Virus record (IMG/VR): IMGVR_UViG_3300033182_000980
Coordinates: 248,001 to 312,000 of that record
DNA length: 64,000 nt
Direction: 5' to 3' (one strand)
The position numbers and the translations under genes are program-made. The stretch's first letter is position 1, and each line of letters opens with the position of its first letter. Below, one piece after another: positions 2,503-34,496 of this stretch. The notes under the pieces were generated by a model. It made no database searches and was not told where the DNA came from. It saw only the letters and a program-made list of their open reading frames with translations.

Positions 2503-4887
2503 TTAACCTAAGTGAACAAATGCCTCATACAGCTCGGTTCCTGGTTCGATACCGAACTCTTGGAATACCTTTGTGACTGCGTTTCTCGCGGTGAGTTTCT
2601 TCTTTATAAAGAACTCTTCTCTTGCTTTTAGAGCCGACTGAACTTCATTCGCCCAGTTTGGTAAGATAAACTGATCGTAAGCCTCGCTCTTAACCTCGTT
2701 TAACTCTTTTGTAGGAATAGGACCGACAAGGTATCGGACACGATTATCACAGTCAGCATTACCTAGACCCTTTGGTAAGTTAGCCCCTTCGGTCAGACCA
2801 ATGTCGAGGTAGAAACGATAGCGAACAAGCTCACTAGCGATGCCACTATAGAAGCCTTTAAGTTTACCGCCACTGTTTGTGACAGTTTTATGTGCTTGAC
2901 CTGCTTTCGCAGGTACCGATTTGTAGCTTGGGTTATTGGCAATAGTAATGATGTTATTCAAAAAGTCAGACATCTTATAATCTAAACCTTTTGGTCTATA
3001 CGGAGCGATAAGATCTTCGAGGCTTTTCGTGATCTTTGCAACCTCAGCGTCAGAAGCCACCATAAGTGCGTTTACTAAACCTTTGTAAACAGAATTAGTG
3101 ACTTTGAAGAAACTTAATTTTCCTACTTCAATCTTGTGAGACTTCCCACCTGCTTTTACAGTTGTAAATCCACCGTTTAAGACGAGGGCTAACTCAAGAT
3201 ACCAACCTAGAGTTCCTTTATTGCCACCAATAAACTTTTTGACCAGAGCTTGATCCATACAGTTATCAGCAAACTCTTTGATAGCTATTATCTTTGCTTT
3301 GTCAGCAAAGACAGCAGAGTTAAAGATGTGCTTTAATCCAAGAGGCAAAAGAGGCTCTTGATGTTCTTCGATAGTGTCTTGGATCGCTCTCAAGGCTTTA
3401 GGGTCGGACTCTCTAAGAGCTAAAGACCATTCTGTATCATCGAGATACAGGTTAGCATCAAGCATCCAACTGAAACCGTCATCGGTGAACATCTTTGACA
3501 GCTTTTTCATGTGCTCTAGCGTTAGATTAACTTTAGCTAGTTCAGCGATCACTTCTCCAATTTTACCTTCTGGTAAGCTCAGACCACTTACAGCGACATT
3601 TGCCATCTGGTTGGCTTGACCCTCGATCATCTGGACAGCTTCTTCGGCCTCCACAGAGACTTCGATGTTATCAATCATCCAACCGTCATTAACAAGGTCA
3701 TACTCTGCATCGAGGCGATCAAGCTCATCGAGTTCACCCGAATGGTAGCTTCGGATAAGCTCTTCAAGCTCATCTGTGATAGGATTTCCTGTCATCTCAA
3801 GGAGTTTTCTAGCGAGAGTATTTGATTCGACACTATCATATACACCAGCAAAGAAATCTGGCTTCAAGGTGTCAGAGATCAGAGCATCATCATTACTAAT
3901 GTGGTCGGACAACAAAAGCATCTCTAGCCCTGTGAGCCACTTTAATGGTTCGTTATCCAAACTCCCGTCAGTTAAAAGACCCTCAATCTTATCAAGATCT
4001 TCTTCGCTAAGACCTTTTTCTTCTATGTATTTCTCGGTGTTGGCTTTACCGAGGTTATTCTCAATATGACCCTCGGCGGATAACTGATCGAGTCTGCTAT
4101 ATTCCTCGCCTTCAGAAGATTGACCTTCTGTTGACTCTTGTCTCAGTTTTACCCCTTTTGCGATCTCATCCATTCCTAGCTCTCTTCTTTCTTGAAGAGT
4201 TAGGTAGCGACCTTTAGATGCCATTGCACTGAATACACCTTTACGAATAGCCCCCATAACTCTCTCAGCGATAGAGCTTCCCCCTCCTACATTTTCAGTA
4301 ATTCTTTTCCAAGGGGTGACATCTGTATCTCTTACAGCATTGTCTCTTTTACCAGTCACAGCCCACATAGTGGCCCTCTGCCAAAGGTCTTCAAGGATGT
4401 CGTTACTTAGTCTCGTATACTCTCGGTTGTTATTAACAAAAGCACCATAGGTACTGTTGATGCTTTTAGTGAGAGCAGGTTTGATTTGCTCATAGAGACT
4501 GTTCAAGAAGTTTGCGTATCTTGCAACGCTTGCTTGTCGCCTTCTTCTTCTCATTCGATTCGCAAAGCTACCAACTCCACTAAGTTGGTTTAGGATCTTT
4601 GTCCCATACTCTGTGGGGGAGTCAGCACCAACATCTGGGATAGTCATTCCCTGTAGTGCTGGATCACCTGTCATCTGAGAAAGAGCGGCACTTGCCCAAT
4701 AGAAGAAGATCTTCTTAAGATCAGTGTCACTTTGTAGGTACAACCTCAGATCAGCTTGTTTTTTCATACCCGCTGATTTGATGTACTGCTCAAGCTCTCT
4801 TACAAGCTCTTGAGCAACTTTGGTCTTGGTGTGGAGGCCAGATTTCTTGATCTGATCCAGCATCTGGTTCGCCTGTTTTATGTTCAT
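2503..4887 (-). CDS. Large hypothetical protein, probable virion internal/head protein
   Basis: 794 aa; N-terminal region rich in K/R-x-A motifs (IKQAN, TKVAQ, IKSAG, KKQAD, RRQASVARYA); late motif upstream. Confidence 0.55.
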   Translation of the reverse strand: MNIKQANQMLDQIKKSGLHTKTKVAQELVRELEQYIKSAGMKKQADLRLYLQSDTDLKKIFFYWASAALSQMTGDPALQGMTIPDVGADSPTEYGTKILNQLSGVGSFANRMRRRRRQASVARYANFLNSLYEQIKPALTKSINSTYGAFVNNNREYTRLSNDILEDLWQRATMWAVTGKRDNAVRDTDVTPWKRITENVGGGSSIAERVMGAIRKGVFSAMASKGRYLTLQERRELGMDEIAKGVKLRQESTEGQSSEGEEYSRLDQLSAEGHIENNLGKANTEKYIEEKGLSEEDLDKIEGLLTDGSLDNEPLKWLTGLEMLLLSDHISNDDALISDTLKPDFFAGVYDSVESNTLARKLLEMTGNPITDELEELIRSYHSGELDELDRLDAEYDLVNDGWMIDNIEVSVEAEEAVQMIEGQANQMANVAVSGLSLPEGKIGEVIAELAKVNLTLEHMKKLSKMFTDDGFSWMLDANLYLDDTEWSLALRESDPKALRAIQDTIEEHQEPLLPLGLKHIFNSAVFADKAKIIAIKEFADNCMDQALVKKFIGGNKGTLGWYLELALVLNGGFTTVKAGGKSHKIEVGKLSFFKVTNSVYKGLVNALMVASDAEVAKITKSLEDLIAPYRPKGLDYKMSDFLNNIITIANNPSYKSVPAKAGQAHKTVTNSGGKLKGFYSGIASELVRYRFYLDIGLTEGANLPKGLGNADCDNRVRYLVGPIPTKELNEVKSEAYDQFILPNWANEVQSALKAREEFFIKKKLTARNAVTKVFQEFGIEPGTELYEAFVHLG

Positions 4888-4933
4888 ATCTCTCTCGCTT
4901 TCCGATAGACAAGTTTTACAGAAGATACCAAGT

Positions 4934-4945
4934 ATAAACGATCTA
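4934..4945 (-). promoter_or_regulatory. Putative late promoter (TAGATCGTTTAT)
   Basis: Matches TA-N5-TTTAT, 47 nt upstream of the ATG at 4887. Confidence 0.6.
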
Positions 4946-5064
4946 CAAATCGTATAAAAGAGGGATAAAGGGGTTGCTCCATTGGTCTATGTGTGATAAG
5001 GTGGGGTCTGACTTGGATAGATGTCCAATAAGTCAGCCTTTAACCCGATCAATCGGAGACACAA

Positions 5065-9900: not shown

Positions 9901-12660
9901 TTAGTGTCTTAAACCAATGTCCGAGAGTGTCTTGTCAACGAGCTTGCGAACCACTTCAAGATCATCTGTCTTTTTGACCACTCGACCATTGACCTCTACG
10001 ATTAAGTTTTTGTAGTCATAGCCCGATCCACTAGACTTGAAACCACTAATAGAAATCTTAGTGTTTGGGGCTTCAATCTTGATGACCCTCTCTCCTTTTC
10101 GGTCAAGTACACCAGTGACTTTGTGTTGCCCCTTCTTGAACATCCACTGTAGCTGTTTTTCAAATCGGCTGAGATCTTGCCACCCAATGTGGTTGCTAAG
10201 TAGTCCAAACAAGCGAGCTTCCATATAGCGAGAAGCGACTCGAATGGCTGGTAAGTCAGACATAAGGTTCTCTTTGACTTGCTCCTTGTCATAGATGATG
10301 CTTGGGTTTGAGAGATACATATTCCTTAGTTTTGAGGACACAGACATCATAAAGTCTTTCATCCCTCGACCAGAGAATCCTTGATTTCTTGCGAGAGTAG
10401 GCAACAAGCTACGATCTTTTAAAATGGAACTTGGGGATCTCAACGCTTCGACTAACTCTCTTTGTTCTTCTGGAGTCAGTTCAAGAGACAGTTCTTCCAT
10501 TCGCCTTAGTTGTTCACGACTAAGTGTGCCGAGATCATGTTGAAGGTTGAAGCCTCGATTCACGAGGTTGATGAAAAACATATAGGGTAGCTTTCTGCTG
10601 TGCGTAGATAAAGCCGCCCTAAATGATTTATGCTCTCTAGCTATCTCCACGAGAACTTCAATAACACCTAGTTTGTCGAGTGTAAGAAGTGCGTCTTTCC
10701 ATGTCTTGGACTTAAAGATATGGAGTAATTCTCGGTAGACACGATCTGGACTCTGATCCTTTAACTTGTGCTTGTTTCTCTTGATCGCTTGGGCTGTATC
10801 TTTGGGGATAGTCAGACCATATTTGACCACAAACTTAACTGCACGAATGATGCGTGTAGGATCTTTCGATAAGGTCTTATCAGCATCTAGGAAACACCTT
10901 GCTTCACCTGCTTCTAAATCCCTAATGCCGCATCCTGTCATGTCGATGATTTCTGCTTTATCTGGACCATCAGCTAAGTCAGATAGTCTCCACATAAGCA
11001 TATTAAATGTGTAGTCTCTGTTTGTTAGGGAGGTGTAGAGATTTGATCCTTCTAACTTCTCTTCTTCGGGGTATTCCTCAACATCTCTAATCTCGATAGC
11101 CGCATCACCATCTTTTGAGAACTCGCTAAGATCAACACCGTCTACGATCCACTCGGAGTTTACCCAAATGTGTGTGCCATACCAGTCAGTCATCACATGG
11201 GTCTGTGCGGGGATCATGTCTACAAGGTTATTAGCAACCCACTCGGCATCCCTTCCTAGATTTTCAGCGTCTACTACAACATCTACATCTTTCACAGGCA
11301 CATCAATCATAAAGTTGCGAATCGCACCACCTGCGACATAAATGTTTTCTGCCACTCCCCGACCCATAGATTTAGTTGCCCTTGAGAGCCACTTCATAAG
11401 GGCAGTTGAGTGAGCGTTTGAGACAGCTAGTTTCTTTCTTCTGGCCATTTTAGAAATCCTTCTCTTGATTAGATTTGGGTCATTTATGATTGATGGATCA
11501 GAGACATACATCTCTCTTAGTTGATCCATTTTGCGAGACATAAAATCTCTCATGTTCGACTTTCCGACACCCTTATGTCTAGCAAGGGTGGGGAGGAAAG
11601 ATTTGTCTTTAATTGCACCACCAGGAGACTTTATGTATTTAACAAGATCTCTCTGTTCCTCGTCCGTTAAGGCGAAGGCTTTTTCCTCTAGCCTAGCGAT
11701 CTGATTTCGATCTAAGACCGACAGGTCATGTCGAAGGGAGATACCTAAGTTGAGCATCCTAATGAAGAACCTATAGGGTAGCTTCTTCGCTTCTGTACTT
11801 AGTGCCGCTCTGAAGCTAGGTTCTTCTTCGGCTATGTCGGCAAGCACCTCAATCAGACCTAACTCTTCAAAGGTATCTAAAACGCTCTCCCATGTTCTCT
11901 CGGATAGGATGCCTCTAATCTCACCATAGATGCGGTTCGGGGGGACTTTGGTTAGAGCGTATCTCGTCTTTAGGATAGCCCTCTTAGTCTCATTAGGGAT
12001 GTTCAGACCATATTTGACTAGGAACTTAACAGCCCTAAGAATACGAGTAGGGTCATCATAGAATGTTTTTTCGGGGTCTAGTGGACACCTTGCTTCGCCT
12101 GCTTCTAAGTCAGCTAATCCACAGCCTGTCATATCTACGATTTCTGCTTGGTCTGGACCATCCGCTAAGTCAGCTAACCTCCACATAAGAGTGTTGAAGG
12201 TAAAGTCTCTACGATAGATGTCCTCTCGAATAGTGGATTTGGTGATCGAGGGTTTGTACCCACCCCCTGTGTCATCAGAGTAAGTCTCTGATCTAGCGTC
12301 CACGATCTCAATCGCCGCATCACCTTCTGCACTAAACTCACTAAGATCAAGACCGTCTACTATCCATTCAGACTTAACGAAGATCTTAGCTACACCATAC
12401 TGATCGCTCACAGTTTCAGTTCGAGCAGGAATCATGTCTGCCAGCTCGTCAGCGAGCCAAGCCGAGTTCTCCCCAAGAGCTATGGAGTCAAGCACAAGGT
12501 CTACATCTTTAACTGGCTTATTGAGCTTAAAGTTGCGTATAGCTCCACCTACTACATAAGTGTTTTCAGCAACATCTCTACCTAGTCTCTTGGTGGATCT
12601 TGAGAGCCACTTCATTAGAGCTACCGAGTGTTCATTAGATACCATTGCTGACTTAATCAT
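9901..12660 (-). CDS. Tandem-duplicated class II tRNA nucleotidyltransferase (CCA/poly(A) polymerase family), two catalytic units plus small C-terminal domain
   Basis: Two copies of GGAIRN...KDVD and DPTRI(L/I)RAVKF; unit 1 EDIYRRDFTFN, unit 2 TSLTNRDYTFN. Start moved to ATG 12660 (MIKSAM), which overlaps the upstream gene's end. Confidence 0.85.
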   Translation of the reverse strand: MIKSAMVSNEHSVALMKWLSRSTKRLGRDVAENTYVVGGAIRNFKLNKPVKDVDLVLDSIALGENSAWLADELADMIPARTETVSDQYGVAKIFVKSEWIVDGLDLSEFSAEGDAAIEIVDARSETYSDDTGGGYKPSITKSTIREDIYRRDFTFNTLMWRLADLADGPDQAEIVDMTGCGLADLEAGEARCPLDPEKTFYDDPTRILRAVKFLVKYGLNIPNETKRAILKTRYALTKVPPNRIYGEIRGILSERTWESVLDTFEELGLIEVLADIAEEEPSFRAALSTEAKKLPYRFFIRMLNLGISLRHDLSVLDRNQIARLEEKAFALTDEEQRDLVKYIKSPGGAIKDKSFLPTLARHKGVGKSNMRDFMSRKMDQLREMYVSDPSIINDPNLIKRRISKMARRKKLAVSNAHSTALMKWLSRATKSMGRGVAENIYVAGGAIRNFMIDVPVKDVDVVVDAENLGRDAEWVANNLVDMIPAQTHVMTDWYGTHIWVNSEWIVDGVDLSEFSKDGDAAIEIRDVEEYPEEEKLEGSNLYTSLTNRDYTFNMLMWRLSDLADGPDKAEIIDMTGCGIRDLEAGEARCFLDADKTLSKDPTRIIRAVKFVVKYGLTIPKDTAQAIKRNKHKLKDQSPDRVYRELLHIFKSKTWKDALLTLDKLGVIEVLVEIAREHKSFRAALSTHSRKLPYMFFINLVNRGFNLQHDLGTLSREQLRRMEELSLELTPEEQRELVEALRSPSSILKDRSLLPTLARNQGFSGRGMKDFMMSVSSKLRNMYLSNPSIIYDKEQVKENLMSDLPAIRVASRYMEARLFGLLSNHIGWQDLSRFEKQLQWMFKKGQHKVTGVLDRKGERVIKIEAPNTKISISGFKSSGSGYDYKNLIVEVNGRVVKKTDDLEVVRKLVDKTLSDIGLRH

Positions 12661-13228
12661 CTGACTTAACCTCTTCTGGTTCGGGTGTGGTTTCGACACC
12701 AAGTGATTTCTTAACCTTTGCTTTGAACATCTTGATAACGAACGCATTTAAAGCACCCGCACTCGCACCCATATAGACATCAATCATCATAAATGGCTTT
12801 GATAAGGTGACTGCAATACCCGCTCCTGTTAAAACAGCAACAAGTCGGATCACAGCGTCAGCCTTCTCTTTACAGGTTTTGAAGATGAAGGGCTTAATGA
12901 TCTGAGTGATCGCTAGGCTCAAGATAGCGGCGTTGACTACAAGATACACATGACCCATAAAGACATCATGTGTTTCACGACCTTCAGCTTTCCAAGGAAT
13001 ATACTCCATATACTGTGTGCAGGCTACACCCTCTTCGTATATTTTACATTCTTGGTTTTCTTCACCACATAGAAGATCATTACCCTCTATGATTTCGCAC
13101 AGCCTCGGTTCAGACTCCCCATCTTTATTCATGGTTTGACAGAGGATTGTATGAACATCAACAAACTGACAATGGTCTGGTAATGCGTGTAGTGGCTCTG
13201 CACTTATAGGTATGTTATGTTTAGCCAT
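12653..13228 (-). CDS. Membrane protein, holin-like C-terminal part
   Basis: Cys-rich N-terminus followed by about three hydrophobic segments and a charged tail; late motif upstream. Confidence 0.4.
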   Translation of the reverse strand: MAKHNIPISAEPLHALPDHCQFVDVHTILCQTMNKDGESEPRLCEIIEGNDLLCGEENQECKIYEEGVACTQYMEYIPWKAEGRETHDVFMGHVYLVVNAAILSLAITQIIKPFIFKTCKEKADAVIRLVAVLTGAGIAVTLSKPFMMIDVYMGASAGALNAFVIKMFKAKVKKSLGVETTPEPEEVKSDD

Positions 13229-13266: not shown

Positions 13267-13278
13267 ATAAACAAACTA
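13267..13278 (-). promoter_or_regulatory. Putative late promoter (TAGTTTGTTTAT)
   Basis: Identical 12-mer to the one upstream of the tail tube gene (49991). Confidence 0.7.
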
Positions 13279-13620
13279 TTAAGTGATAGAGATGCTATGG
13301 CTACTAGACTTAAACCTTCGAGCTAAAGAGTCCCACACCCTCAATGCGGACTCGCTCGTCTTACCCTCATAGAGATAGTCTGGTATAAACTGAAAGGGTT
13401 GCCCCTTGCTTTCAACCTTACCCTCTTTGACCACCTCAAGGTATAACCGAGTACCAATCCCTCGCCCTCTGTATTGGTCTTTAAGCTCACTTTCAAGCAA
13501 GACGAGGGTTTGGGTATTGGGTAAGTAAACAGCGTGAGCAAAACCTACCTCTACGCCCTTATCGAGAGCAAGGATATAGAACCGATCTCTTGTATCTGGC
13601 TCACGCTTAAAAGAAATCAC
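13279..13620 (-). CDS. GNAT-fold acetyltransferase-like protein (paralogue 3)
   Basis: YRGRGIGTRLY acetyl-CoA-binding motif A; shared FIPDY...TSESALRVW. Confidence 0.65.
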   Translation of the reverse strand: MISFKREPDTRDRFYILALDKGVEVGFAHAVYLPNTQTLVLLESELKDQYRGRGIGTRLYLEVVKEGKVESKGQPFQFIPDYLYEGKTSESALRVWDSLARRFKSSSHSISIT

Positions 13621-14156
13621 AGGTGGGGCATCTTATCTATGACGATGACATCACCCTCCGAGTGATACTTCTTAGCAAATGATTTCCATACCCTTAGAGC
13701 CTTATCCGAGGTAGACCTATTGTGGCAGTAGTTAGGCATGAACAACAAAGGCAATCTACCATGTTCAAGCCACGCTTCTTTGACTAACTCAACATACATT
13801 TGAACTCCACATCTCTGACCTTGTAGAGACTCATGGAGATAGGAACTAATAACTTCTACAACAAGAATAACTGGTTCATCTCCATCTTCATATCGAAGCA
13901 TTTCGTCCTCAAACCAATACTCTTCGGATAGCTTCTCAATGTCATCTGCACAGGCAAAATGACCTCTACCCATTTCTTCTAGTGTATAGAAAGCTACATG
14001 GGCTTCACAATGCCCCTTGTATTCACCATCAACTTGAAGCTCAACACCAAGATTAGCATTTCTATCGTCATAGTCAGTGGAGACATCAATGGTGATGTTG
14101 CCCTTTTGGTAATTGGCTTTCATGTAGCGACTAGCTACTCTTTCATAGGATTTCAT
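13617..14156 (-). CDS. GNAT-fold acetyltransferase-like protein (paralogue 2) with RVASRY leader
   Basis: LQGQRCGVQMY motif A; FMPNYC...TSDKALRVW; N-terminus MKSYERVASRYMKA. Confidence 0.6.
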   Translation of the reverse strand: MKSYERVASRYMKANYQKGNITIDVSTDYDDRNANLGVELQVDGEYKGHCEAHVAFYTLEEMGRGHFACADDIEKLSEEYWFEDEMLRYEDGDEPVILVVEVISSYLHESLQGQRCGVQMYVELVKEAWLEHGRLPLLFMPNYCHNRSTSDKALRVWKSFAKKYHSEGDVIVIDKMPHL

Positions 14157-14650
14157 CTTGTACTCCCATCATATACAATAACATCACCAGACGATGGGAG
14201 CTTACGAGACAGTGATTTCCAGACCCTTAAAGCGGAGTCTGATGTTTCGTCTTGAACACTCTCACAATAGTTAGGGATAAATAGAAAGGGTGCCTGAACC
14301 ATAGAGTAGGTGTGTTCCAGAAACTTTAGGTACATTTCTATTCCGTAGCCTTTACCTCTTGAAGACTTAGCGATCTTACTATCCTTAATAGAAACGATAT
14401 ATATTTTATCCCCTTTAACTAATTTTGGATAACGATCGATGAGTTTATACATATCCTCATAGCACAAATAAGTATCCCCAATGAATTCGGGTTCGATTTC
14501 GTCTTGTTTAACTTTTTCAATCCTACCACTAATGTTTCCTATCAAACTCCCACTGAGGTAGGCATAGCCTTTAGGGTTGCGAGAATGGTTGTTAAAGTTA
14601 AACACCATTTCACTAGCATATCTTAATGCGACTCTCTGATATGGCTTCAT
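14153..14650 (-). CDS. GNAT-fold acetyltransferase-like protein (paralogue 1) with RVALRY leader
   Basis: SRGKGYGIEMY motif A; FIPNYC...TSDSALRVW; N-terminus MKPYQRVALRYA. Confidence 0.6.
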   Translation of the reverse strand: MKPYQRVALRYASEMVFNFNNHSRNPKGYAYLSGSLIGNISGRIEKVKQDEIEPEFIGDTYLCYEDMYKLIDRYPKLVKGDKIYIVSIKDSKIAKSSRGKGYGIEMYLKFLEHTYSMVQAPFLFIPNYCESVQDETSDSALRVWKSLSRKLPSSGDVIVYDGSTR

Positions 14651-14686: not shown

Positions 14687-14698
14687 ATAAACAATTTA
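14687..14698 (-). promoter_or_regulatory. Putative late promoter (TAAATTGTTTAT)
   Basis: Matches the motif, upstream of the GNAT triplet. Confidence 0.6.
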
Positions 14699-20028: not shown

Positions 20029-21255
20029 ATGTTTTTTGAGTATGAAAAAAAGAAGTACAACGGAATAGACGATTACACTTGGGTGAGTGGAGGTAAATTA
20101 TTCACACCTGCCCATGAGCTGTCCGAGATCAAATCAAAGTTTACAAGATATGAGATCATACTCAAAATCTGTCAGGTGATATATGACCACCAAATACCAT
20201 TCCCCTATAAAGAGCACAGCGTATCTAAAGCTAAAGGTGAGTTATCTAAGCTCTTTAATACACATTTCCCTGCTGATGAAAGAGAATGGTATTCAGACTT
20301 ATGCGAAGGCATCAAGTGCTTTAAATATAGGGGGGGCTATCTGCGGATAAAGACCAACCACACAGGCACTTATGTCTCTGACCTATTTTGTCATCGTACT
20401 CGATTAAAGGCACAAAAGAAAAGGTACGCTGATGATCGTCTAGGAATGGTAGGTCTTTGGGAGTATCTTTTATCTTACAGGTGCGAGGAGGAGTCTGATA
20501 TAAATACGGTCATGTATATGTTTATCAATGGTATCTTTCACTTTAGCGATAAGATTGACCATACAGCGGTTTACACTTCGGGGAGATTATCTATTGGTAC
20601 TGTAAGTCAATTTAAACCCGCTAGTGCTAAGGCTCTGTACGATTTATTTGGAGCTAAGAATGTACTCGACTTTTGTGCTGGATGGGGGGATAGGCTAGTA
20701 GGATTTCATGCATCCAATGCCGAAACATATATCGGAATTGACCCTAACTCTGATTTGCACCCTCAATATGAAAAGATACATGAGTTTTGTGGCACTGGAA
20801 AAGAAGCAAAGTTCATCTGTTTGCCCGCAGAAGATGTAGATTATTCAGAACTCCGATATGACTTTGTTTTCACATCTCCACCATACTTTGATCTGGAAAT
20901 ATACAATGGAGAAGAGACTCAATCCGTGAAAAGATACCCTAAGATCGACCATTGGTTAAAGGGGTTCTTGTTCAAATCTTTGAGTAAGATTTATGAGTAT
21001 CTAGAAGATGGTGGTAGAATAGCGGTCAATATATCAGACAGTCCAGCAGTGAACATTTTTGTTTGTGAGTCTATGCTAGAGCACATGGAGTCGATAGGTG
21101 CTACTTATGAGGGTACTATAGGTTATGGCCTTGCTCGTAGACCTACCGAGAGTGGGCATAATTATTTAAAAGAAAAGTCTGAGCCTATTTTTATTTGGTC
21201 TAAGGGTGTTGCTCCCGATCCAAATCGACAAACAGATAATTTTTTTGGAGTCTAG
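20029..21255 (+). CDS. DNA amino-methyltransferase (N4-C/N6-A type), paralogue 1
   Basis: LDFCAGWGDR (motif I), YIGIDPN, FTSPPYF (motif IV); start at MFFEYE. Confidence 0.85.
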   Translation: MFFEYEKKKYNGIDDYTWVSGGKLFTPAHELSEIKSKFTRYEIILKICQVIYDHQIPFPYKEHSVSKAKGELSKLFNTHFPADEREWYSDLCEGIKCFKYRGGYLRIKTNHTGTYVSDLFCHRTRLKAQKKRYADDRLGMVGLWEYLLSYRCEEESDINTVMYMFINGIFHFSDKIDHTAVYTSGRLSIGTVSQFKPASAKALYDLFGAKNVLDFCAGWGDRLVGFHASNAETYIGIDPNSDLHPQYEKIHEFCGTGKEAKFICLPAEDVDYSELRYDFVFTSPPYFDLEIYNGEETQSVKRYPKIDHWLKGFLFKSLSKIYEYLEDGGRIAVNISDSPAVNIFVCESMLEHMESIGATYEGTIGYGLARRPTESGHNYLKEKSEPIFIWSKGVAPDPNRQTDNFFGV

Positions 21256-23081: not shown

Positions 23082-23122
23082 AAACCCTCGATTGCCCTAG
23101 TGGTAGTCGGGGGTTTTTCTTT
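23082..23122 (+). terminator. Rho-independent terminator
   Basis: AAACCCTCGATTGCC-loop-GGTAGTCGGGGGTTT stem (with G-U pairs) followed by a T-tract, between convergent genes. Confidence 0.75.
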
Positions 23123-24366
23123 TAGTGGGCCAGAGACATATATCGGGAAGCAACCCTTGAAGCGGCTCGTGCCATTTGTAGGTTATCTACGAGATCGGGA
23201 TTTCTTTTAATGTCTTTCATTTTAAGGAAATCACCTTGCATAGTCTTTACGAACATATCCTTTTCCGAGGTGAGGTTATTAACTTCTTTAACGACATGGT
23301 TTTCAACTTTCTTTCCTCCAAACCATGACTTCCAGACCTTACCAAACTTCTTTGCCATTTTCTTAGCGAGAACTGATTTGAGTACGCCTGCTAAAGCACC
23401 TTTTGTGAGTAAGGTATAGATAATGCCACCACCAAGAACAGCAGAGACTACTTTTGTTCCTAATAAAGTCGCTAGGATAATTTTGAACCCTGCGTAGGCG
23501 GCCCCAACAAGCAAAGCACCTGTACCAGCGGCAAACGCTTTCATTGTGCCACCTTCACCGTCACCCATTACTTGCTTCCAAGTGTCTTTCATAGCTGGTA
23601 TCAAAGATAGTGGGTTCAAGAGGGCGTTAAGCTCTTTGAGGATTGCTCCGACAACTTTCACACCCATCTCTTTCTGGACGATTTCTTGAGCAGACTGCTT
23701 GATGCTTTTCATGGCTGAATCTGGCATCTTCATTCTTCTAGGGTCTGCCTTTTTCCCACGCTGTTCTTCTAATGACTTTTGTACTCTTGGGTCTGGATTT
23801 TTGATTAACTCGTCATAGTACATCCAGCCCTCTAAATAAGAGTCAAAGTGGAACGCAAATACCTCATTGGTGAATGGGCTACTAAAGTCTTGAGTGTTCC
23901 GATCTTCATCTGTTTGAAACCATCCACTTATAAGCTCACCTGTGTTATAATCCTTATCTTGATCGGTGTCCCACTTAAACTTTCTTTCAACACACCCTTG
24001 CCACCAAGACCAGTAGTTGCCTTCAGCGACTTTACCTATGATGGATTTTTGCAGACCTTCGGTCATCAGATCTACAAAGGGAGTGTCTACAATAAACTTT
24101 TGTAGGAGTTCATAGAAGGTCTTTACAAACTTCTCTTTCAACCCTTTGACCCACGCAAGACCCGTATTGATTGTGTTTGAAATCCAGTTCTTGATCTTAC
24201 CAAAGAAGCCTGTTTTTTGGTACTCAAGCTGTGCGACTCTAAGCTGTAAGAGTGCAATCTTGACCATTTGAGGTTCATCCACCATAGGTAAGCGACTTGC
24301 TCTTTTAGTCCTGTAGTGAGCTTGGAAAACATCTGGGTCTGCGAGTAGATCAAAAGCGTATTTCAT
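23122..24366 (-). CDS. Probable virion-packaged protein with long hydrophobic Gly/Ala segment and C-terminal RVASRY tag
   Basis: Ends ARAASRVASRYMSLAH; hydrophobic AFAAGTGALLVGAAYAG...VLGGGIIYTLL; late motif TAGACTATTTAT at 24406-24417. Confidence 0.55.
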   Translation of the reverse strand: MKYAFDLLADPDVFQAHYRTKRASRLPMVDEPQMVKIALLQLRVAQLEYQKTGFFGKIKNWISNTINTGLAWVKGLKEKFVKTFYELLQKFIVDTPFVDLMTEGLQKSIIGKVAEGNYWSWWQGCVERKFKWDTDQDKDYNTGELISGWFQTDEDRNTQDFSSPFTNEVFAFHFDSYLEGWMYYDELIKNPDPRVQKSLEEQRGKKADPRRMKMPDSAMKSIKQSAQEIVQKEMGVKVVGAILKELNALLNPLSLIPAMKDTWKQVMGDGEGGTMKAFAAGTGALLVGAAYAGFKIILATLLGTKVVSAVLGGGIIYTLLTKGALAGVLKSVLAKKMAKKFGKVWKSWFGGKKVENHVVKEVNNLTSEKDMFVKTMQGDFLKMKDIKRNPDLVDNLQMARAASRVASRYMSLAH

Positions 24367-24403: not shown

Positions 24404-24763
24404 CTATAAATAGTCTACAAACTCTCCTTCCCAATCAGTATATGTGACTTTGACCACACCAGATTTGTGTATGTGCCTTCGGCAATACTTACAAGGTCGA
24501 GCCATTGTCATCGTACCGTCTTTGAGAAATCTAACGACCTCAAGGCGATCTCCTTCTTGGGTGTGTCTAAGAGCGTCCATCTCTGCGTGTAGGCAAGACA
24601 CAAGTGTTCCGTCTTTGACCCTCCGAGCAAACCTTAAGTCTTGTTTGCTTGAGTTGACTCCAATGTAGACGGGTTTCTTTTTTCGGTAGACTATGCAAGC
24701 GACATGGTACTTTTCACCATTAGACAATGCCATTCTCATAGCTTGTTTATAAATGCGTTTCAT
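24404..24763 (-). CDS. Zn-dependent cytidine/deoxycytidylate deaminase-fold protein
   Basis: HAEMDAL...PCKYC zinc motif. Confidence 0.85.
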   Translation of the reverse strand: MKRIYKQAMRMALSNGEKYHVACIVYRKKKPVYIGVNSSKQDLRFARRVKDGTLVSCLHAEMDALRHTQEGDRLEVVRFLKDGTMTMARPCKYCRRHIHKSGVVKVTYTDWEGEFVDYL

Positions 24764-26764: not shown

Positions 26765-26776
26765 TAGTTTCTTTAT
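26765..26776 (+). promoter_or_regulatory. Putative late promoter (TAGTTTCTTTAT)
   Basis: Identical to the 9889-9900 motif. Confidence 0.65.
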
Positions 26777-26814: not shown

Positions 26815-27858
26815 ATGAAAGTCATTGAGAACACGAAAGGCTTGGTCTATTTCCATGCCCCCAAGTCTAAAGAAAAGCACATCACCAAGACATTAACCGA
26901 GGATCTTTTTTCCGACATCGGTAATGATATGTACGAGAACAGGCTTACCGACTGGGACGGATTCAGCTGGAGTGGTGAGGAGACTGATGCTTTCTTTGAT
27001 GAATGTATGCCCATTGTTCGTAAGAACATAACACTAGAAGTCTTTCCTCGAAGCAGATATGGGTACGACTGTACGATGTTTCGTTTCCATCTTGACTTTG
27101 CAGGCATGGAGCGAGACTTAGCTCGTAAGATCAGAACTCTAAAGTTAAAGGGTAAGCGTTCATCAAGGGATAGGGTAGAGGGTTGGAGTATCACAGTCCC
27201 TTCACTAGCTTTCAATCATGTGTCCTCTGCTTTAAAGAGCATTGGTATTAAATGGGAGTCATCTAAAACATCTAGCTACAATGGAGAGCTAAACATGAGA
27301 AGATCAGCATCAGAAATCATCAATGACCTTGAATCCCGTATTGCCCGACTTGAGTCGGGAAGTTTCAATGTCGGAGATCAAGTAGAATGTGTTGTGCTTG
27401 GAAAACAAGTCAAAGGGGCTATCAAAGCAGACCACTTTGGAAAGTATGTCTTTGTAGACTTTGGCAGTCAAACTCTAGCTGTGCCTTATGAGGACTGTGA
27501 GCTTGTTAATCAAACGACTGCACCTTGGAATCCCAAAGATATGTTTAGGGATCTAGCTAGGTCTTTCCCTAGTTTACCTAGAGGTCAAGCGTACTCTAAA
27601 AATGGTAGTACCCAAATCATTGTGTCCGACATTGGAAAACATTCAGCTCGGATTAATATAGCTGGTCCTACCTATGGAGTCGCCAAAAAGATCATGGCAA
27701 AGATTAGTAAGTTGCTCGCTAAAAAGTATGGGTTTGAAATGGTGAGGTATGACACCCTAGCACTTAATGATGGGAGCGGATACAAGTATACGATTGAAAT
27801 GAGTTCTATGGGGTCAATCAGTTTCGGTTCTAGTGTAGAGACTATTAGGTTGTATTAA
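26815..27858 (+). CDS. Hypothetical two-module protein with internal MRRSASE leader at 27295
   Basis: GGAG RBS before ATG 26815; internal GGAGAG + ATG at 27295 encoding MRRSASEIINDLESRIARLE. Confidence 0.6.
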   Translation: MKVIENTKGLVYFHAPKSKEKHITKTLTEDLFSDIGNDMYENRLTDWDGFSWSGEETDAFFDECMPIVRKNITLEVFPRSRYGYDCTMFRFHLDFAGMERDLARKIRTLKLKGKRSSRDRVEGWSITVPSLAFNHVSSALKSIGIKWESSKTSSYNGELNMRRSASEIINDLESRIARLESGSFNVGDQVECVVLGKQVKGAIKADHFGKYVFVDFGSQTLAVPYEDCELVNQTTAPWNPKDMFRDLARSFPSLPRGQAYSKNGSTQIIVSDIGKHSARINIAGPTYGVAKKIMAKISKLLAKKYGFEMVRYDTLALNDGSGYKYTIEMSSMGSISFGSSVETIRLY

Positions 27859-28186: not shown

Positions 28187-28198
28187 TAGTTCCTTTAT
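28187..28198 (+). promoter_or_regulatory. Putative late promoter (TAGTTCCTTTAT)
   Basis: Matches the motif, 41 nt upstream of the ATG at 28239. Confidence 0.6.
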
Positions 28199-28238: not shown

Positions 28239-28689
28239 ATGAGAAATCATAACAAGATGGCAAGTCGGGTCGCATATCGCTACATGAAGCAAGCTGGACT
28301 TTTGAGCAAGATTGTAAACTTCTTCTCGGAGTCTCCTCGTGAGAAAGCAAAGAAGCCAGTTTACGATGTCGCTAAGTTTTGGGTGACCGCAGGGATGTAT
28401 GGCACGACTATGGGAGAGGTTTCTAGGGAGCTAAAAACTCAAAGGCAAAGACACAGCGATTATTGATGTCAATGGTCGTAAAGTTAAGCTCTCTCTTGAG
28501 ATGGATCGTGTTAAGATGAAAGATGACGGAGGCATCAAAGGCAACATCTTCGTTGCGATTTCTCTTACAGGGGTAGACGAGAATGTTCCTAAGAGGGATC
28601 TTGAAAAGATGCTTATGCAGATTGTGAAAGAGACTCGTCTTAGGAATGTGTTTACCTCAACCCCTGTGGAACACCCAAGGATGGGCTAG
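28239..28689 (+). pseudogene. RVAYRY-tagged gene split by a +1 frameshift in an A5 run (28433-28437); sequencing error, pseudogene or programmed shift
   Basis: Removing one A joins 28239..28466 and 28501..28689 into a 149-aa ORF (...SRELKLKGKDTAIIDVNGRKVKLSLEMDRV...). Confidence 0.6.
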
Positions 28690-31763: not shown

Positions 31764-31780
31764 GTAACCCCTTACCTATA
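31764..31780 (+). promoter_or_regulatory. Putative early promoter (GTAACCCCTTACCTATA)
   Basis: One mismatch to consensus; followed by hairpin GTGAGGA-ACGA-TCCTCAC. Confidence 0.65.
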
Positions 31781-31835
31781 ACATCCTGTGAGGAACGATC
31801 CTCACCAACTAACTACTCTGACAAGGAGAGCAAAT

Positions 31836-32204
31836 ATGAGCATGGCGATGGATCTTTACCGAGAAGTAATGAGTGAGTTTAATGATGAGAGCCCGTACTA
31901 TCGACCTCACCTCGCTGATCATGGGTATGACTACGAGGACGGATACTGGTTCGCTGTGTTCGTAAACAAAGATGTAGTCGCTCGTAAAGACTACCCTAAG
32001 TTTGGCATCAAGAAAGGCGAGAAGCATCGCTTCATCAAGAGTAAGTACATCTGTGACGAGACAGGCTGTAGCTCTTGGGAAGTGGAGCGTAAAGCTCTTT
32101 CACCCACAGTAAGCCCCACACCTGTTATGTCTGATAGAGACGCTTGGTATGCCGAGGGATATAAATCAAGTTGGACTGGATCTTGGACTCAAAAGGATAA
32201 ATAA
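31836..32204 (+). CDS. Hypothetical protein
   Basis: AAGGAG RBS before ATG 31836. Confidence 0.6.
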   Translation: MSMAMDLYREVMSEFNDESPYYRPHLADHGYDYEDGYWFAVFVNKDVVARKDYPKFGIKKGEKHRFIKSKYICDETGCSSWEVERKALSPTVSPTPVMSDRDAWYAEGYKSSWTGSWTQKDK

Positions 32205-32277
32205 TGGCATACGCTTTAATCTGTGGACTGATAGAGGTGTCAATCATAATCACCTTAATAAAGGCATGGAGGTCATA

Positions 32278-32535
32278 ATGAGACAAGTAGAAGCTATCAG
32301 CTATCTGTTAGGGCAAGACCCCCGACCTAACGGATCAAATTTTAACTGGTCGGGTATCACCCATTCGGGCGAACGCCTTAGCCTCTATTACGAGGTCAAC
32401 CGTAAACTTAGTGATCTACATTGGGTGGAGGTCATGGACTCACGAGGCGTACTAGGCTTACCTACAGATGACTTTGGTCTAGTCGGTATCAATATCTCGG
32501 ACTTACCCAAATACTTTAAGCAAGAGGAGAAATGA
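32278..32535 (+). CDS. Hypothetical protein
   Basis: GGAGG RBS before MRQVEAISY. Confidence 0.45.
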   Translation: MRQVEAISYLLGQDPRPNGSNFNWSGITHSGERLSLYYEVNRKLSDLHWVEVMDSRGVLGLPTDDFGLVGINISDLPKYFKQEEK

Positions 32536-32536
32536 A

Positions 32537-32866
32537 ATGGGTTTAGATCAATATGGTTTCGCTCGTAAAGAGGGCAAGAAAGATACACAACTCATGCAAT
32601 GGCGTAAGCACTCAAACCTTGAGGGTTGGATGCAAGAGCTTTACGCTGAAAAGGGTGGCACAGAAATGTTCAACTGCGTTGAGCTATCCCTCACCAAAGA
32701 GGATTTGTTGAGGCTCAAGGCAGAGTACAAGAGTTTAGAGGAAGCATCTGGGTTCTTTTGGGGTACAAGTCAATCCTCGGATGATGTGGACACTGGTCGC
32801 TTTATTGAGCTTGCCCTTGTCGCTTTAGAGGAGGGGTATGAGGTCATCTACACATCCTGGTGGTGA
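32537..32866 (+). CDS. Conserved phage protein (MGLDxY...WRK...GFFxG...YxSxW type)
   Basis: MGLDQY, WRKHSNLEGW, GFFWG, YTSWW; GAGGAG RBS. Confidence 0.7.
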   Translation: MGLDQYGFARKEGKKDTQLMQWRKHSNLEGWMQELYAEKGGTEMFNCVELSLTKEDLLRLKAEYKSLEEASGFFWGTSQSSDDVDTGRFIELALVALEEGYEVIYTSWW

Positions 32867-33835
32867 CGATTTATATTTTCTTTATAAGATCTCCATTGGT
32901 GCTAACCCTTAACCGACAATGGAGAATGACCTATGAGAAGATCAGCATCAGAAGTAATCAGAGAGCTTGAGTCAAGAGTCGATCAGCTTGAAAAACAAGC
33001 TGGTCTATTTGATTTCTTTCGCAGTGAGAAAACGATTCAAACCGAGACTAAAGAGCTTGAGAAGTTAGTCAAGTCTATACGAGGTGTCAGTCGTGTTGCC
33101 ATTGACATCAAAAACCGAGATCGTTGCAAAATGAAAGTAACCTATGAAGGTGAAACCCTTATTCTTAAAGGGTGGTGCAATGATGATGAGTTAGGTATTT
33201 ATGGTAAGGGCAAAAGAGCTGTCTATATACCAGGTAGTCCAGGTGTCGGACTTTTGACAACACACGGCATAAGATCAAGGGGAGGAAGACCTTCATCTAA
33301 AGGGGGGAAGATTAACACTTATGTATTTGGGGGTCAGATAAGACGAGGCAAAGTGATTACAGTCAGTCTCTACACCATGAATGGATCTCGTGTTAAAGAT
33401 ACCAAAGAACTTGAGGCTTTCTTAGATTTGATTTTAGAGGATGCACTCGATGATGGACCTCGCAAGAGGGAAGAAGAAATCGAGAGACAGAGGATTGAGA
33501 AGGAAAGGGTTGAACAGGAGAGGGTACACAACAGAAAGGTGCAGAAGGAGAGGGAAGAGCGTAAGCGTCAAAAGAGGGAGATGTTTGAAAAGAACAGACA
33601 AAAAAAGATGCAGGGTAGGCAAGCCAGCCTAAGCTCAAACCGATTAGTAAAGAGCAGAAGCCATTGGTGATGGATATGGAGTCATCTACACTTCGTGGTA
33701 GTGATTTTTATAAATTATTTATAGGTTCTCATAAGTGATCTAACCTTAACCCCTATGGAGAATGAACATGAGAAGGTCTGCTTCAGAAGTTATCAGAAAC
33801 CTTGAAATGAGGATTGCTCGTCTTGAGCGAGTTGC
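32833..33835 (+). repeat. Imperfect direct repeat (about 32833-33000 and 33671-33835): gene tail + late promoter + RBS + MRRSASE leader
   Basis: GTCATCTACAC.TC.TGGT.GTGA, TA-N5-TTTATA, CTAACC(C)TTAACC, ATGGAGAATGA, ATGAGAAG.TC.GC.TCAGAAGT.ATCAGA in both copies. Confidence 0.8.
32933..33670 (+). CDS. Hypothetical protein with MRRSASE leader (probable virion cargo)
   Basis: MRRSASEVIRELESRVDQLEKQAG; late motif at 32874-32885. Confidence 0.65.
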   Translation: MRRSASEVIRELESRVDQLEKQAGLFDFFRSEKTIQTETKELEKLVKSIRGVSRVAIDIKNRDRCKMKVTYEGETLILKGWCNDDELGIYGKGKRAVYIPGSPGVGLLTTHGIRSRGGRPSSKGGKINTYVFGGQIRRGKVITVSLYTMNGSRVKDTKELEAFLDLILEDALDDGPRKREEEIERQRIEKERVEQERVHNRKVQKEREERKRQKREMFEKNRQKKMQGRQASLSSNRLVKSRSHW

Positions 33836-34496
33836 GAAGTCAGATGGTCCAGTGCTGAAAGCCATCAATTCTTCAAATGCTTACCATCACCCGCATTATG
33901 GTGGAAGCTACACCACTGCGATGCTTTTTGAGTTAAGATCTAATAAGAGATGGGAAGCAGTCCTTGACGGAAATGTTGTCATCGTATCTCAAGGATTGAT
34001 CGACGGTAAAACCAAGACTACTAAGAAAACCTTTGATGACGGTGTTGATGCTGAACGACACTTTAGGAGAATCTTGGGTAGGAAACTTAATCAAGGTGGG
34101 GTGGATTGGACATCTGCGTTCTATGCAAAAGACGGAGATAAGAGCGAGAGAGGAAGGCATCATGGTCCTTCCGAAATAATGTATGGTCGTTATCCTACCC
34201 CTAATAACCTACAGGAGAGATACCACGCAACCGCTTTACCAGACATTAAATCTGCTCTTGACGAGTTAGAGGGTATGGCTATTCCTGCTCTTATGGAAGA
34301 TGACTTTCATAGCGGGGATAGACATCTACAACACGCACTCGTACTGATTGGTAGCCACAACGGTCATGAAGATTTGTCCACCTCATTATTTGAGGGGATC
34401 TTATCTGCCAAGCAAAACTTAAAGAGTGGATTAGACTCTGATCAAGTAATCAGAGATATATCTGATCTCGTGGATCAGATCAGACGCAAGATGTGA
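33768..34496 (+). CDS. Hypothetical protein with MRRSASE leader; weakly WGR-domain-like middle
   Basis: MRRSASEVIRNLEMRIARLERVA; SNKRWEAVLDGNVVIVSQGLIDGKTKTTKKTF...AERHF..ILGRKLNQG resembles a WGR domain; late motif at 33711-33722. Confidence 0.6.
   Translation: MRRSASEVIRNLEMRIARLERVAKSDGPVLKAINSSNAYHHPHYGGSYTTAMLFELRSNKRWEAVLDGNVVIVSQGLIDGKTKTTKKTFDDGVDAERHFRRILGRKLNQGGVDWTSAFYAKDGDKSERGRHHGPSEIMYGRYPTPNNLQERYHATALPDIKSALDELEGMAIPALMEDDFHSGDRHLQHALVLIGSHNGHEDLSTSLFEGILSAKQNLKSGLDSDQVIRDISDLVDQIRRKM

What the first reader, a model, noticed from the sequence alone, without database searches (positions are those of the whole stretch)
2503..34496. Portable peptide tags on unrelated late proteins: a candidate virion-cargo sorting and processing system
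Seen: two short peptides recur on otherwise unrelated proteins. Tag A (RVA[S/L/Y]RY) is at the N-terminus of 13617 (MKSYERVASRYMKA), 14153 (MKPYQRVALRYA) and 28239 (KMASRVAYRYMKQAG), at the C-terminus of 23122 (ARAASRVASRYMSLAH), internal in the nucleotidyltransferase at about 10225-10242 (AIRVASRYMEAR), and degenerate in 2503 (RQASVARYA). Tag B (MRRSASE[V/I]IxxLExR[I/V]xxLE) starts 32933 and 33768 and is internal at 27295. Tags often sit beside K/R-x-A motifs (KQA, KSA, KLA, KMA, RVA). Every tagged gene lies downstream of a TA-N5-TTTAT motif; I saw neither tag in the tail, baseplate or replication proteins. Established: T4 internal proteins use a short capsid-targeting sequence removed by the prohead protease, and phiKZ head proteins are cleaved at a short consensus. 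Inference: the tags direct cargo into the head, K/R-x-A marks maturation sites, and the cargo is injected at infection.
Basis: partly seen in the sequence, partly recalled or inferred. Interest (0 to 1): 0.88.

Follow-up and report, generated by a model that had tools for sequence, protein, structure and literature searches.

The report
Portable peptide tags on late phage proteins
A 376-kb uncultured phage puts two short, strongly conserved peptide tags on dozens of otherwise unrelated late proteins, and one tag also sits in conserved head-assembly proteins, so the tags probably load proteins into the capsid, though no experiment has tested this.

Summary
Tag A (R-V-A-x-R-Y) occurs 5 times in the window against 0.04 expected. 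Tag B (MRRSASEVIRNLEMRIARLE) occurs 3 times against 0.015 expected. Codon usage shows selection on the peptides, not on the DNA.

The window is part of a 375,691-bp IMG/VR contig. About half of that genome holds at least 23 Tag B proteins. A profile search finds 1,106 tag-bearing protein clusters in public metagenomes, almost always with the tag at residue 1. None was found in 185,579 bacterial and archaeal genomes, and neither GenBank phages nor PHROGs showed the tag. The parts after the tag are mostly unrelated.

It also precedes the head operon, the capsid gene, an endolysin-like gene and a baseplate-like gene.

Tag A is a conserved element of two proteins encoded just upstream of the prohead protease, across distant relatives.

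The best reading is a capsid-targeting or cargo-loading system analogous to the phage T4 capsid targeting sequence (confidence about 0.5). Cleavage at K/R-x-A and injection of the cargo are untested. K/R-x-A-S is not enriched window-wide.

The parts
33768..33836 (+). Tag B (residues 1-23) at the N-terminus of the 242-aa WGR-domain protein 33768-34496
   Evidence: HMM 49 bits. AF2 predicts a lone helix at residues 5-25 with low pLDDT, a disordered stretch at 26-49, then the WGR fold. The WGR match is weak in the window protein itself (Pfam E = 0.092) and clear in homologues (and P0010).
32933..33001 (+). Tag B at the N-terminus of the 245-aa protein 32933-33670. This protein also has RQAS 13 residues before its C-terminus.
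27295..27363 (+). Tag B preceded by a Met and a GGAG, inside the in-frame ORF 26815-27858. It is either a fusion or a second start.
   Evidence: The homologue L042:1176-1733 stands alone with its own promoter motif.
14124..14141 (-). Tag A, 5 residues after the start of the GNAT-like protein 13617-14156
14618..14635 (-). Tag A, 5 residues after the start of the GNAT-like paralogue 14153-14650
   Evidence: Its first 11 residues are 91% identical to those of the ART-PolyVal protein L065:2506-3579.
28266..28283 (+). Tag A near the N-terminus of the 75-aa protein 28239-28466, preceded by KMAS and followed by KQAG
23140..23157 (-). Tag A 4 residues from the C-terminus of the 414-aa protein 23122-24366, which has hydrophobic membrane-like segments. 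Preceded by RAAS.
10225..10242 (-). Tag A at the joint between the double nucleotidyltransferase and a C-terminal domain of about 110 aa, in ORF 9901-12747
   Evidence: That domain is a separate protein with N-terminal Tag A in L033 and L079.
4516..4542 (-). Degenerate Tag A (RQAS-VARYA), residues 116-124 of the 794-aa protein 2503-4887
   Evidence: Conserved in orthologues. Lies at a boundary between a disordered stretch and a helix in the AF2 model.
4747..4866 (-). N-terminal leader (residues 8-47) of the 2503 family, nearly invariant although the proteins are only 36-40% identical overall. A third leader-like module that resembles Tag B.
33711..33722 (+). Promoter-like motif TA-N5-TTTAT, 57 nt before 33768
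32874..32885 (+). Promoter-like motif, 59 nt before 32933
28187..28198 (+). Promoter-like motif, 52 nt before 28239
26765..26776 (+). Promoter-like motif, 50 nt before 26815
24406..24417 (-). Promoter-like motif (loose form), 51 nt before 23122-24366
14687..14698 (-). Promoter-like motif, 48 nt before 14153-14650. The co-directional genes 13617-14156 and 13279-13620 follow with no motif of their own, so one transcription unit is inferred.
13267..13278 (-). Promoter-like motif, 50 nt before 12653-13228, with 9901-12747 following on the same strand
4934..4945 (-). Promoter-like motif, 58 nt before 2503-4887
2487..2498 (-). The same motif, 55 nt before the baseplate-wedge / sheath-initiator-like gene 1403-2443. 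Supports the structural (late) class of this promoter.
49991..50002 (+). The same motif, 75 nt before 50066, the first of a run of same-strand genes that ends with the tail-like 58289-62617

Best explanation
The two peptides are portable address tags of a late-expressed class of proteins, found in a clade of uncultured phages whose longest contigs are about 350-376 kb.

Tag B is a 20-residue N-terminal amphipathic helix. It ends in [KR]-[QS]-[AS]-[SA] and is followed by a flexible linker rich in Ser, Ala and Thr.

Tag A (R-V-A-x-[RK]-Y-[ML]) is native to two conserved proteins of the head-morphogenesis operon, encoded just upstream of the prohead protease. Enzymes and small proteins carry copies of it at either end or at domain joints.

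Most likely both tags dock their carriers onto a component of the assembling prohead (scaffold-like core, protease or shell). The carriers would then be enclosed in the head, as with the capsid targeting sequence of phage T4 or the cargo-loading peptides of encapsulins. Possibly the prohead protease trims them at small-residue sites next to the tags.

Shown: the tags exist, are selected as peptides, are portable, are co-regulated with head genes, and Tag A belongs to head-operon proteins. Inferred: docking in the prohead, cleavage, and delivery into the host.
For: Statistics and codon evidence.

Portability:
- 87 complete Tag B proteins fall into 64 clusters by their post-tag part.
- 1,106 representative clusters carry the tag, starting at residue 1 in about 145 of the best 150.
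- At least 23 Tag B ORFs lie in 178 kb of this genome.
- Information content drops to zero after residue 24.

Common partner: invariant residues include positions that I assign, on my own heptad reading, to e and g (E13, R15, E20), while the position I assign to f (14) is free. This points to one shared partner rather than generic self-association.

Structure: AF2 gives a detached helix followed by a disordered linker.

Co-regulation: the promoter-like motif lies about 50-60 nt upstream of most Tag B genes. It also precedes the head operon and the capsid-gene pair, a baseplate-like gene and an amidase/endolysin. It does not precede the polymerase, the helicases or the methyltransferase checked.

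Head module of this same contig: p344, p1171, protease (phrog_18299, E = 4.9e-14), acidic scaffold-like protein, p208, capsid protein (phrog_2522, E = 2.2e-51).

Tag A in the head module: it sits at the C-terminus of p344 and 64 aa before the end of p1171. Orthologues only 35-65% identical keep it in variant forms.

Neighbourhood: Tag B genes lie beside the capsid gene in at least 8 loci.

Cargo type: Tag A occurs on an ART-PolyVal enzyme. Window cargo includes nucleotidyltransferase, GNAT-like and WGR proteins, the kinds of enzyme that are useful if delivered with the DNA (PMC5512222).

Boundary motif: [KR]-x-[AS] at positions 21-23 in 61 of 87 tags, against 1.75% per position in the background.
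Against: - There are no proteomic, structural or genetic data, and no cultured relative.
- The Tag B profile finds nothing in the head-operon proteins.
- The promoter motif also precedes genes with no obvious virion role: a glutamine-synthetase-like gene, a topoisomerase gene and lipoprotein-like genes.
- Tag B genes are scattered among nucleotide-metabolism genes.
- [KR]-x-A-S is not enriched window-wide, so a cleavage site is not established.
- The capsid protein lacks the motif.
- Twenty-three or more different cargo proteins per genome is far more than in T4.
Confidence: 0.5

Rival explanations
1. The tags dock their carriers to some other shared late partner. Candidates are a hub or chaperone, a cytoplasmic assembly, the tail or capsid exterior (decoration or adaptor proteins), or each other through short coiled coils. 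On this reading they do not load the capsid interior.
For: Tag B is an amphipathic heptad-like helix, and R15/E20 could pair in a parallel dimer. Conserved N-terminal anchors with variable C-terminal domains are typical of fibre and decoration adaptors (general knowledge). Tag B shows no direct match to head proteins. The promoter motif also serves non-head genes.
Against: Residues are strictly invariant across more than 60 unrelated carriers, which argues for one partner. The cargo includes intracellular enzymes and DNA-binding domains rather than surface domains. Tag A is embedded in proteins of the head operon next to the protease.
Confidence: 0.2
2. The tags are recognition elements for regulated proteolysis or modification. 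They would act as a degron or processing site for the phage protease or a ClpP-like protease, or as a basophilic R-x-x-S kinase site. They would control the stability or activity of late proteins without packaging.
For: R-x-A-S lies inside both tags (RSAS, RVAS) and at their edges. Partial tags recur between domains and at C-termini. The protease's C-terminal extension and the scaffold-like protein are rich in [KR]-x-A-S. A ClpP-like gene lies beside polyvalent-like proteins in relatives.
Against: A 20-residue invariant helix is more than a cleavage or phosphorylation site needs. [KR]-x-A-S is not enriched window-wide. No ClpP-like gene was seen in the window. A processing-site role is compatible with packaging and does not exclude it.
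Confidence: 0.12
3. The conserved promoter, 5'UTR and leader form a recombination or expression cassette that shuffles downstream genes between phages, as regulatory cassettes do in T4-type phages. The peptide would be a passenger of that cassette, or of one fast-diverging paralogue family.
For: The promoter motif, a conserved 5'UTR and AGA-AGA at codons 2-3 travel together with Tag B. Tag B genes occur in tandem clusters.
Against: Synonymous sites vary freely while the residues stay fixed, and Ser6 and Arg15 use two codon families each. Copies within one genome are only about 75% identical in DNA. Tag A has no shared DNA context. Tags also occur internally and at C-termini.
Confidence: 0.08

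Closest known systems
Capsid targeting sequence (CTS) of phage T4 internal proteins and Alt
   Same: A short N-terminal peptide of 10-20 residues, shared by otherwise unrelated and variable proteins made late. In T4 it directs them into the prohead core and is then removed by the prohead protease (PMC5694885). An ADP-ribosyltransferase is among the carriers here too (PMC5512222).
   Different: This is not a T4-type phage: it has a family A polymerase and a small HK97-like capsid protein. No L/I-x-E site ends the tag (my reading of the tag consensus). There are two tags, and one works at either terminus. At least 23 carriers per genome against a handful in T4. Function is untested.
Propeptides of phiKZ / SPN3US giant-phage head proteins (cleavage at S/A/G-x-E)
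   Same: Giant phages that enclose many proteins. N-terminal regions are proposed to target proteins to the head, and paralogues have identical N-termini (PMC5694885).
   Different: Those propeptides are mostly over 100 residues and family-specific, not one portable 20-mer. The protease here gave no Pfam hit. Tag B does contain an invariant A-S-E (residues 5-7), but cutting there would remove only 7 residues.
Encapsulin cargo-loading peptides, and scaffold C-terminal coat-binding tails (P22; herpesvirus scaffold)
   Same: A short peptide at the C- or N-terminus binds the inside of an HK97-fold shell and suffices to enclose cargo (general knowledge). Tag A sits at the extreme C-terminus of a head-operon protein in many relatives. 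Herpesvirus protease-scaffold proteins are cut after Ala at sites such as ..QA-S (PMC4498786), and small-residue motifs follow the protease domain here.
   Different: This is a DNA-packaging virus. No sequence similarity to those peptides was tested or is claimed. The binding partner is unknown.
Polyvalent / MuF-linked packaged effector proteins of phages (Iyer et al. 2017)
   Same: Late-made enzymes predicted to travel with the DNA. Relatives have an ART-PolyVal domain, proteins with several HExxH motifs and large multi-domain proteins, with tags at the domain joints.
   Different: Most carriers here are small single-domain proteins with a short tag, not multi-domain fusions. No MuF domain was seen.

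Membership tests
T4-type capsid targeting sequence | A short (10-20 aa) N-terminal peptide shared by otherwise unrelated proteins | tested here: met
   Tag B covers residues 1-20(24). It is N-terminal in about 145 of the top 150 hits, and carriers fall into 64 clusters among 87 proteins.
T4-type capsid targeting sequence | The tag ends at the prohead-protease consensus site (L/I-x-E) and is removed | tested here: not met
   By my reading of the tag consensus, no L/I-x-E lies at the tag's end. The boundary is [KR]-[QS]-[AS]-[SA] instead. Removal itself cannot be tested here.
T4-type capsid targeting sequence | The tag is necessary and sufficient for packaging into proheads | not testable with these tools
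   Needs reporter-fusion packaging assays or virion proteomics.
T4-type capsid targeting sequence | Carriers are expressed together with head genes | tested here: met
   The same promoter-like motif precedes the tagged genes, the head operon, the capsid-gene pair and a baseplate-like gene. Timing is inferred from the motif, not measured.
phiKZ/SPN3US-type processed head proteins | A T4 gp21 / phiKZ gp175-type protease and S/A/G-x-E cleavage sites | tested here: inconclusive
   The protease matches phrog_18299 'head maturation protease' (E = 4.9e-14) but no Pfam family. A-S-E is invariant at Tag B residues 5-7, but it is not at the tag's end.
Encapsulin-type cargo-loading peptide | A short terminal peptide on cargo encoded next to an HK97-fold shell gene | tested here: inconclusive
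   Tag A occurs at N- or C-termini and inside the head operon. Tag B genes follow the capsid gene in at least 8 loci, but most tagged genes are dispersed.
Encapsulin-type cargo-loading peptide | The peptide binds the inner face of the shell protein | not testable with these tools
Polyvalent proteins (Iyer 2017) | Multi-domain protein with signature domains (ART-PolyVal, metallopeptidase, SNF2, MuF) | tested here: not met
   The window's tagged proteins show only nucleotidyltransferase, GNAT-like and WGR domains. ART-PolyVal occurs only in the relative L065.

The most novel reading that the evidence does not exclude
A natural, modular cargo-addressing system of a virus. A 20-residue helical leader (Tag B) and a 7-10-residue motif borrowed from a core head-assembly protein (Tag A) would send dozens of fast-evolving small proteins and enzymes per genome into the prohead, to be delivered with the DNA. 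Public metagenomes hold more than a thousand distinct tagged protein families. This would be an effector arsenal far larger than T4's internal proteins, with tags short enough to serve as packaging handles.
Probability: 0.4. Interest if true: 0.85.

Novelty: new variant of a known kind. Interest (0 to 1): 0.72.

Why it matters
If the tags load the capsid, this clade would show how huge phages fill their heads with proteins. It would also give a sequence rule that predicts virion cargo directly from metagenomes, with more than 1,100 candidate families already visible. Most of these are small proteins of unknown function, and some could be counter-defence or host-takeover factors, though nothing here tests that. 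Short portable tags for an HK97-fold capsid would also be useful handles for enclosing proteins in phage-derived particles. Even if the destination turns out to be different, a 20-residue invariant leader on a sizeable share of a phage's genes (at least 23 ORFs in the 178 kb examined) is an unexplained sorting signal worth an experiment.

Tried and rejected
- Megablast of 21 kb against GenBank phages gave no match.
- tblastn of the 26-aa tag against phages gave no match.
- Full-text search of the literature for the tag strings found 0 papers.
- Pfam and PHROGs on the tagged window proteins and on 64 Tag B representatives gave almost nothing, and no family corresponds to the tag.
- PDB sequence searches with 2503, 8381, 50066 and the protease gave nothing useful.
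- The Tag B DNA pattern has 0 hits in representative bacterial and archaeal genomes.
- A search for untagged homologues of Tag B cargo found mostly truncated loci or slightly variant tags.
- The Tag B profile against the head-operon proteins found no significant match.
- The degenerate 'Tag B-like' stretches in 23122 and 29273 are not significant.
- K/R-x-A-S as a general site is not enriched in the window.
- The larger forward-over-reverse excess in the loci is inflated by the tags themselves and by redundant contigs.
- A DNA-level repeat or gene-conversion explanation is rejected on codon evidence.
- Tat-type secretion or membrane signal: I rejected this by eye, because no hydrophobic core follows the two Arg residues.
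- Phage-nucleus import: rejected as unlikely, because the replication proteins lack the tags.

Full report
**What the window is.** The window is contig positions 248,001-312,000 of IMGVR_UViG_3300033182_000980, a 375,691-bp viral contig (offset checked). No GenBank phage is close. The best DNA-polymerase match is 45% identical, in a 485-kb uncultured phage. The window encodes:
- a family A DNA polymerase, helicases and six methyltransferase-like paralogues;
- a baseplate-wedge / sheath-initiator-like protein;
- a tail-like giant protein.

Homologues of one tagged protein lie on contigs of 347-376 kb, so this is a clade of huge phages. One Tag B hit comes from a Tara Oceans sample.

200 dinucleotide shuffles give 0.04 hits on average. 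Shuffling residues within the called proteins gives 0.0125. RRSASE occurs three times against 0.015 expected. A short-word all-against-all BLASTP of the window's ORFs finds no other short peptide shared by unrelated proteins. It finds only true paralogue families: the methyltransferases, 7064/8381, and the GNAT-like trio 13279/13617/14153.

**The selection is on the peptide.** Tag A copies use different codon families for the same residues. Over 83 distinct Tag B copies from this and related contigs:
- R15, A17, L19 and E20, which my search pattern did not require, are invariant or nearly so;
- third codon positions carry 0.1-0.6 bit where first and second positions carry about 2 bits;
- Ser6 uses both TCN and AGY, and Arg15 uses both CGN and AGR;
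- information content falls to zero after residue 24.

Only codons 2-3 (AGA AGA) and the Shine-Dalgarno region also look constrained at the DNA level.

**Tag B is a very large family of leaders.** An exact degenerate-DNA scan of IMG/VR found 83 stretches, 13 matches of them on this same contig. In about 1 Mb of fetched loci there are 94 distinct Tag B ORFs, nearly all starting M-R-R-S-A-S-E.
- The 87 complete proteins (59-360 aa) fall into 64 BLAST clusters by their post-tag part, 46 of them singletons.
- Pfam recognises only one WGR and one HAAS domain among 64 representatives. PHROGs gives nine families with one member each, so the tag itself is not a known family.
- A 30-column profile searched against 1.84 billion representative proteins finds 1,106 proteins at E <= 1e-3 and 141 at E <= 1e-10. 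The tag starts at residue 1 in about 145 of the best 150.
- The strict DNA pattern has no hit in 185,579 bacterial and archaeal genomes.
- In the 178 kb (47%) of this genome that I could read, 23 ORFs match the Tag B profile. These loci were fetched because they hold the tag, so the density is biased upward.
- The position right after the tag is [KR]-x-A in 39 of 87 and [KR]-x-[AS] in 61 of 87 proteins, against 0.9% and 1.75% per position in the cargo.
- The next 15 residues are enriched in Ser, Ala and Thr.
- AF2 of the 33768 protein gives a lone helix (5-25, low confidence), a disordered stretch (26-49), then a WGR sheet and a helical bundle.
- On my own heptad assignment, the invariant residues include e and g positions (E13, R15, E20), while the f position (14) is free. 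This fits recognition by one common partner.
- Some proteins carry a second, partial copy (R-[IV]-A-R-L-E-[KR]-Q-[AS]-S) between domains or at the C-terminus. A few have a true internal or C-terminal full tag.

**Tag A.** The pattern [RK][VI]A.[RK][YF][LMA] gives 20 distinct hits in ORFs of at least 60 aa in the loci plus the window. The reversed pattern gives none.
- Most hits lie 3-8 residues after a Met. Three lie 4-7 residues from a C-terminus. The rest lie at joints of large multi-domain proteins.
In L033 and L079 the downstream domain is a separate 132-aa protein with Tag A at its N-terminus.
- [KR]-x-A-[SN] often directly precedes Tag A (KQAS, KMAS, RAAS, RKAS).
- Tag A's own R-V-A-S, and Tag B's R-S-A-S, are instances of the same four-residue pattern.
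- The relative L065 has Tag A (first 11 residues 91% identical to 14153) on a protein with an ART-PolyVal ADP-ribosyltransferase domain (E = 1.9e-12, above the curated cut-off).

**The promoter-like motif is real and belongs to the structural class.** About 65 of 83 Tag B genes have TAGTTT-N-TTTATA some 60 nt before the ATG, followed by a conserved 5'UTR and a GGAG. In the window a strict form occurs 10 times. Nine of these lie 48-75 nt upstream of a start on the same strand: 1403-2443 (baseplate-like), 2503, 8381, 12653, 14153, 26815, 28239, 33768 and 50066. Looser forms precede 23122 and 32933. The motif is absent before the polymerase, the methyltransferase checked, the helicases, 7064, 52579 and 58289. 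Elsewhere it precedes an amidase/endolysin. It also precedes some genes with no obvious virion role: a glutamine-synthetase-like gene, a topoisomerase gene and lipoprotein-like genes.

**The head module of the same genome.** Scanning ORFs from other parts of the contig with PHROGs found a major head protein and a head maturation protease. Both lie at contig 42-64 kb (L019/L103). The order is:
1. p344;
2. p1171;
3. protease, 482 aa (phrog_18299, E = 4.9e-14);
4. acidic scaffold-like protein, 513 aa, with an EF-hand;
5. p208;
6. capsid protein, 292 aa (phrog_2522, E = 2.2e-51, HK97-like; no N-terminal extension relative to the PHROG profile);
7. a LAGLIDADG endonuclease gene, then p215 and p178;
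8. a Tag B gene.

The promoter motif lies 55 nt before p344 and 126 nt before the p208/capsid pair. p344 ends in a Tag A variant (..KMAK-RVARSYL-NLRG). p1171 has KKQAS-RVASKYM 64 residues before its end, just before a zinc ribbon.

The synteny holds in 30 loci from other contigs. The capsid protein is 81-99% identical there, while its neighbours are 31-92% identical. In those relatives the p344 C-terminus keeps Tag A-like peptides. The protein encoded immediately upstream of the protease, which is about 180 aa in its minimal form, keeps Tag A between a beta-rich domain and the zinc ribbon. So Tag A is an old, conserved element of head-assembly proteins.

[KR]-x-A-S occurs 14 times against 2 reversed in p344, p1171, the protease and the scaffold-like protein. 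Two of these lie right after the protease domain. None lies in p208 or the capsid protein. Tag B genes lie beside the capsid gene in at least 8 loci.

**Interpretation.** The facts fit the T4 paradigm, in which a short leader brings late-made proteins into the prohead core (PMC5694885). They also fit terminal coat-binding peptides such as encapsulin cargo-loading peptides and scaffold tails. The cargo types (ADP-ribosyltransferase, nucleotidyltransferase, GNAT-like, WGR, HExxH proteins) match what is expected of proteins delivered with the DNA (PMC5512222). Cutting after Ala at ..QA-S-like sites would parallel herpesvirus protease-scaffold processing (PMC4498786). That comparison is an analogy only.

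**Limits.**
- No tagged protein has been shown in a virion.
- Tag B has no detectable counterpart in the head operon.
- [KR]-x-A-S is not enriched across the window (21 against 17).
- The promoter also serves non-virion genes.
- Tagged genes are scattered through the genome.

I put the capsid-loading reading at about 0.5. The alternatives are another shared docking partner (0.2), a processing, degron or modification signal without packaging (0.12), and a recombination/expression cassette with a passenger peptide (0.08).

**Novelty.** The principle is known from T4, giant-phage propeptides and encapsulins. The sequences, the two-tag arrangement, the use of a motif taken from head-assembly proteins and the scale are not described in any source I could search. 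I file it as a new variant of a known kind, with function unproven.

Noticed in passing
window 20029-21255(+), 34884-36059(-), 38474-39679(-), 39709-40872(-), 40876-42081(-), 45188-46480(-): Six paralogous DNA-methyltransferase-like genes. The C-terminal ~215 aa are mostly 57-60% identical between paralogues (up to 88% for 38474/40876), while the N-terminal parts differ. This looks like a family with swapped specificity or targeting domains.
   Followed up: partly
window 9901-12747(-): One ORF holds two tandem CCA-adding / poly(A)-polymerase-type nucleotidyltransferase units, followed by the Tag A joint and a ~110-aa domain that is a separate gene in relatives.
   Followed up: partly
window 28239-28466(+) and 28501-28689(+): These two small ORFs together match a single 151-aa gene of a relative (L035:11366-11818). 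The window copy seems to be split or interrupted.
   Followed up: no
window 4747-4866(-) (residues 8-47 of 2503-4887): The N-terminal 40 residues of the 2503 family are almost invariant in 21 homologues that are otherwise only 36-40% identical, including a second paralogue per genome. This is a third leader-like module and it resembles Tag B.
   Followed up: partly
L103:13818-16109 (same contig, 42-64 kb): The capsid protein is 81-100% identical across relatives whose neighbouring head proteins are only 31-92% identical. In this contig a LAGLIDADG homing-endonuclease gene lies shortly downstream of the capsid gene.
   Followed up: no
Upstream of Tag B genes, e.g. window 33723-33767: A conserved 5'UTR (AAGTGATCTC .. 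TTAACCTTAACC .. GGAG) lies between the promoter-like motif and the start codon in most Tag B genes of many contigs. Codons 2-3 are fixed as AGA AGA.
   Followed up: partly
L098:10401-16766 and L006:11831-12559: In relatives, a ClpP-like protease gene (PF00574) lies beside large proteins with several HExxH motifs and beside a very basic 208-aa protein that ends in a C-terminal Tag B variant.
   Followed up: no
L101:12628-13626 (same contig, 185-206 kb): A gene whose product hits the Volactin family (PF25216, actin-like). A PhageMetallopep gene and a MazG gene flank a Tag B gene in the same stretch.
   Followed up: no
L083:3186-3441: A 29-aa Tag B ORF is followed, in another frame, by a homologue of the cargo of L078:3327-3611. 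This looks like a frameshifted copy or a sequencing error.
   Followed up: no
window 23122-24366(-) and L007:11134-12129: Two unrelated proteins with hydrophobic, membrane-like segments share the same layout: an N-terminal helical leader with ..EYQ-[AK]-[GT].., and a C-terminal Tag A or RVASY..RRASY. The layout recalls ejection proteins with transmembrane segments.
   Followed up: no
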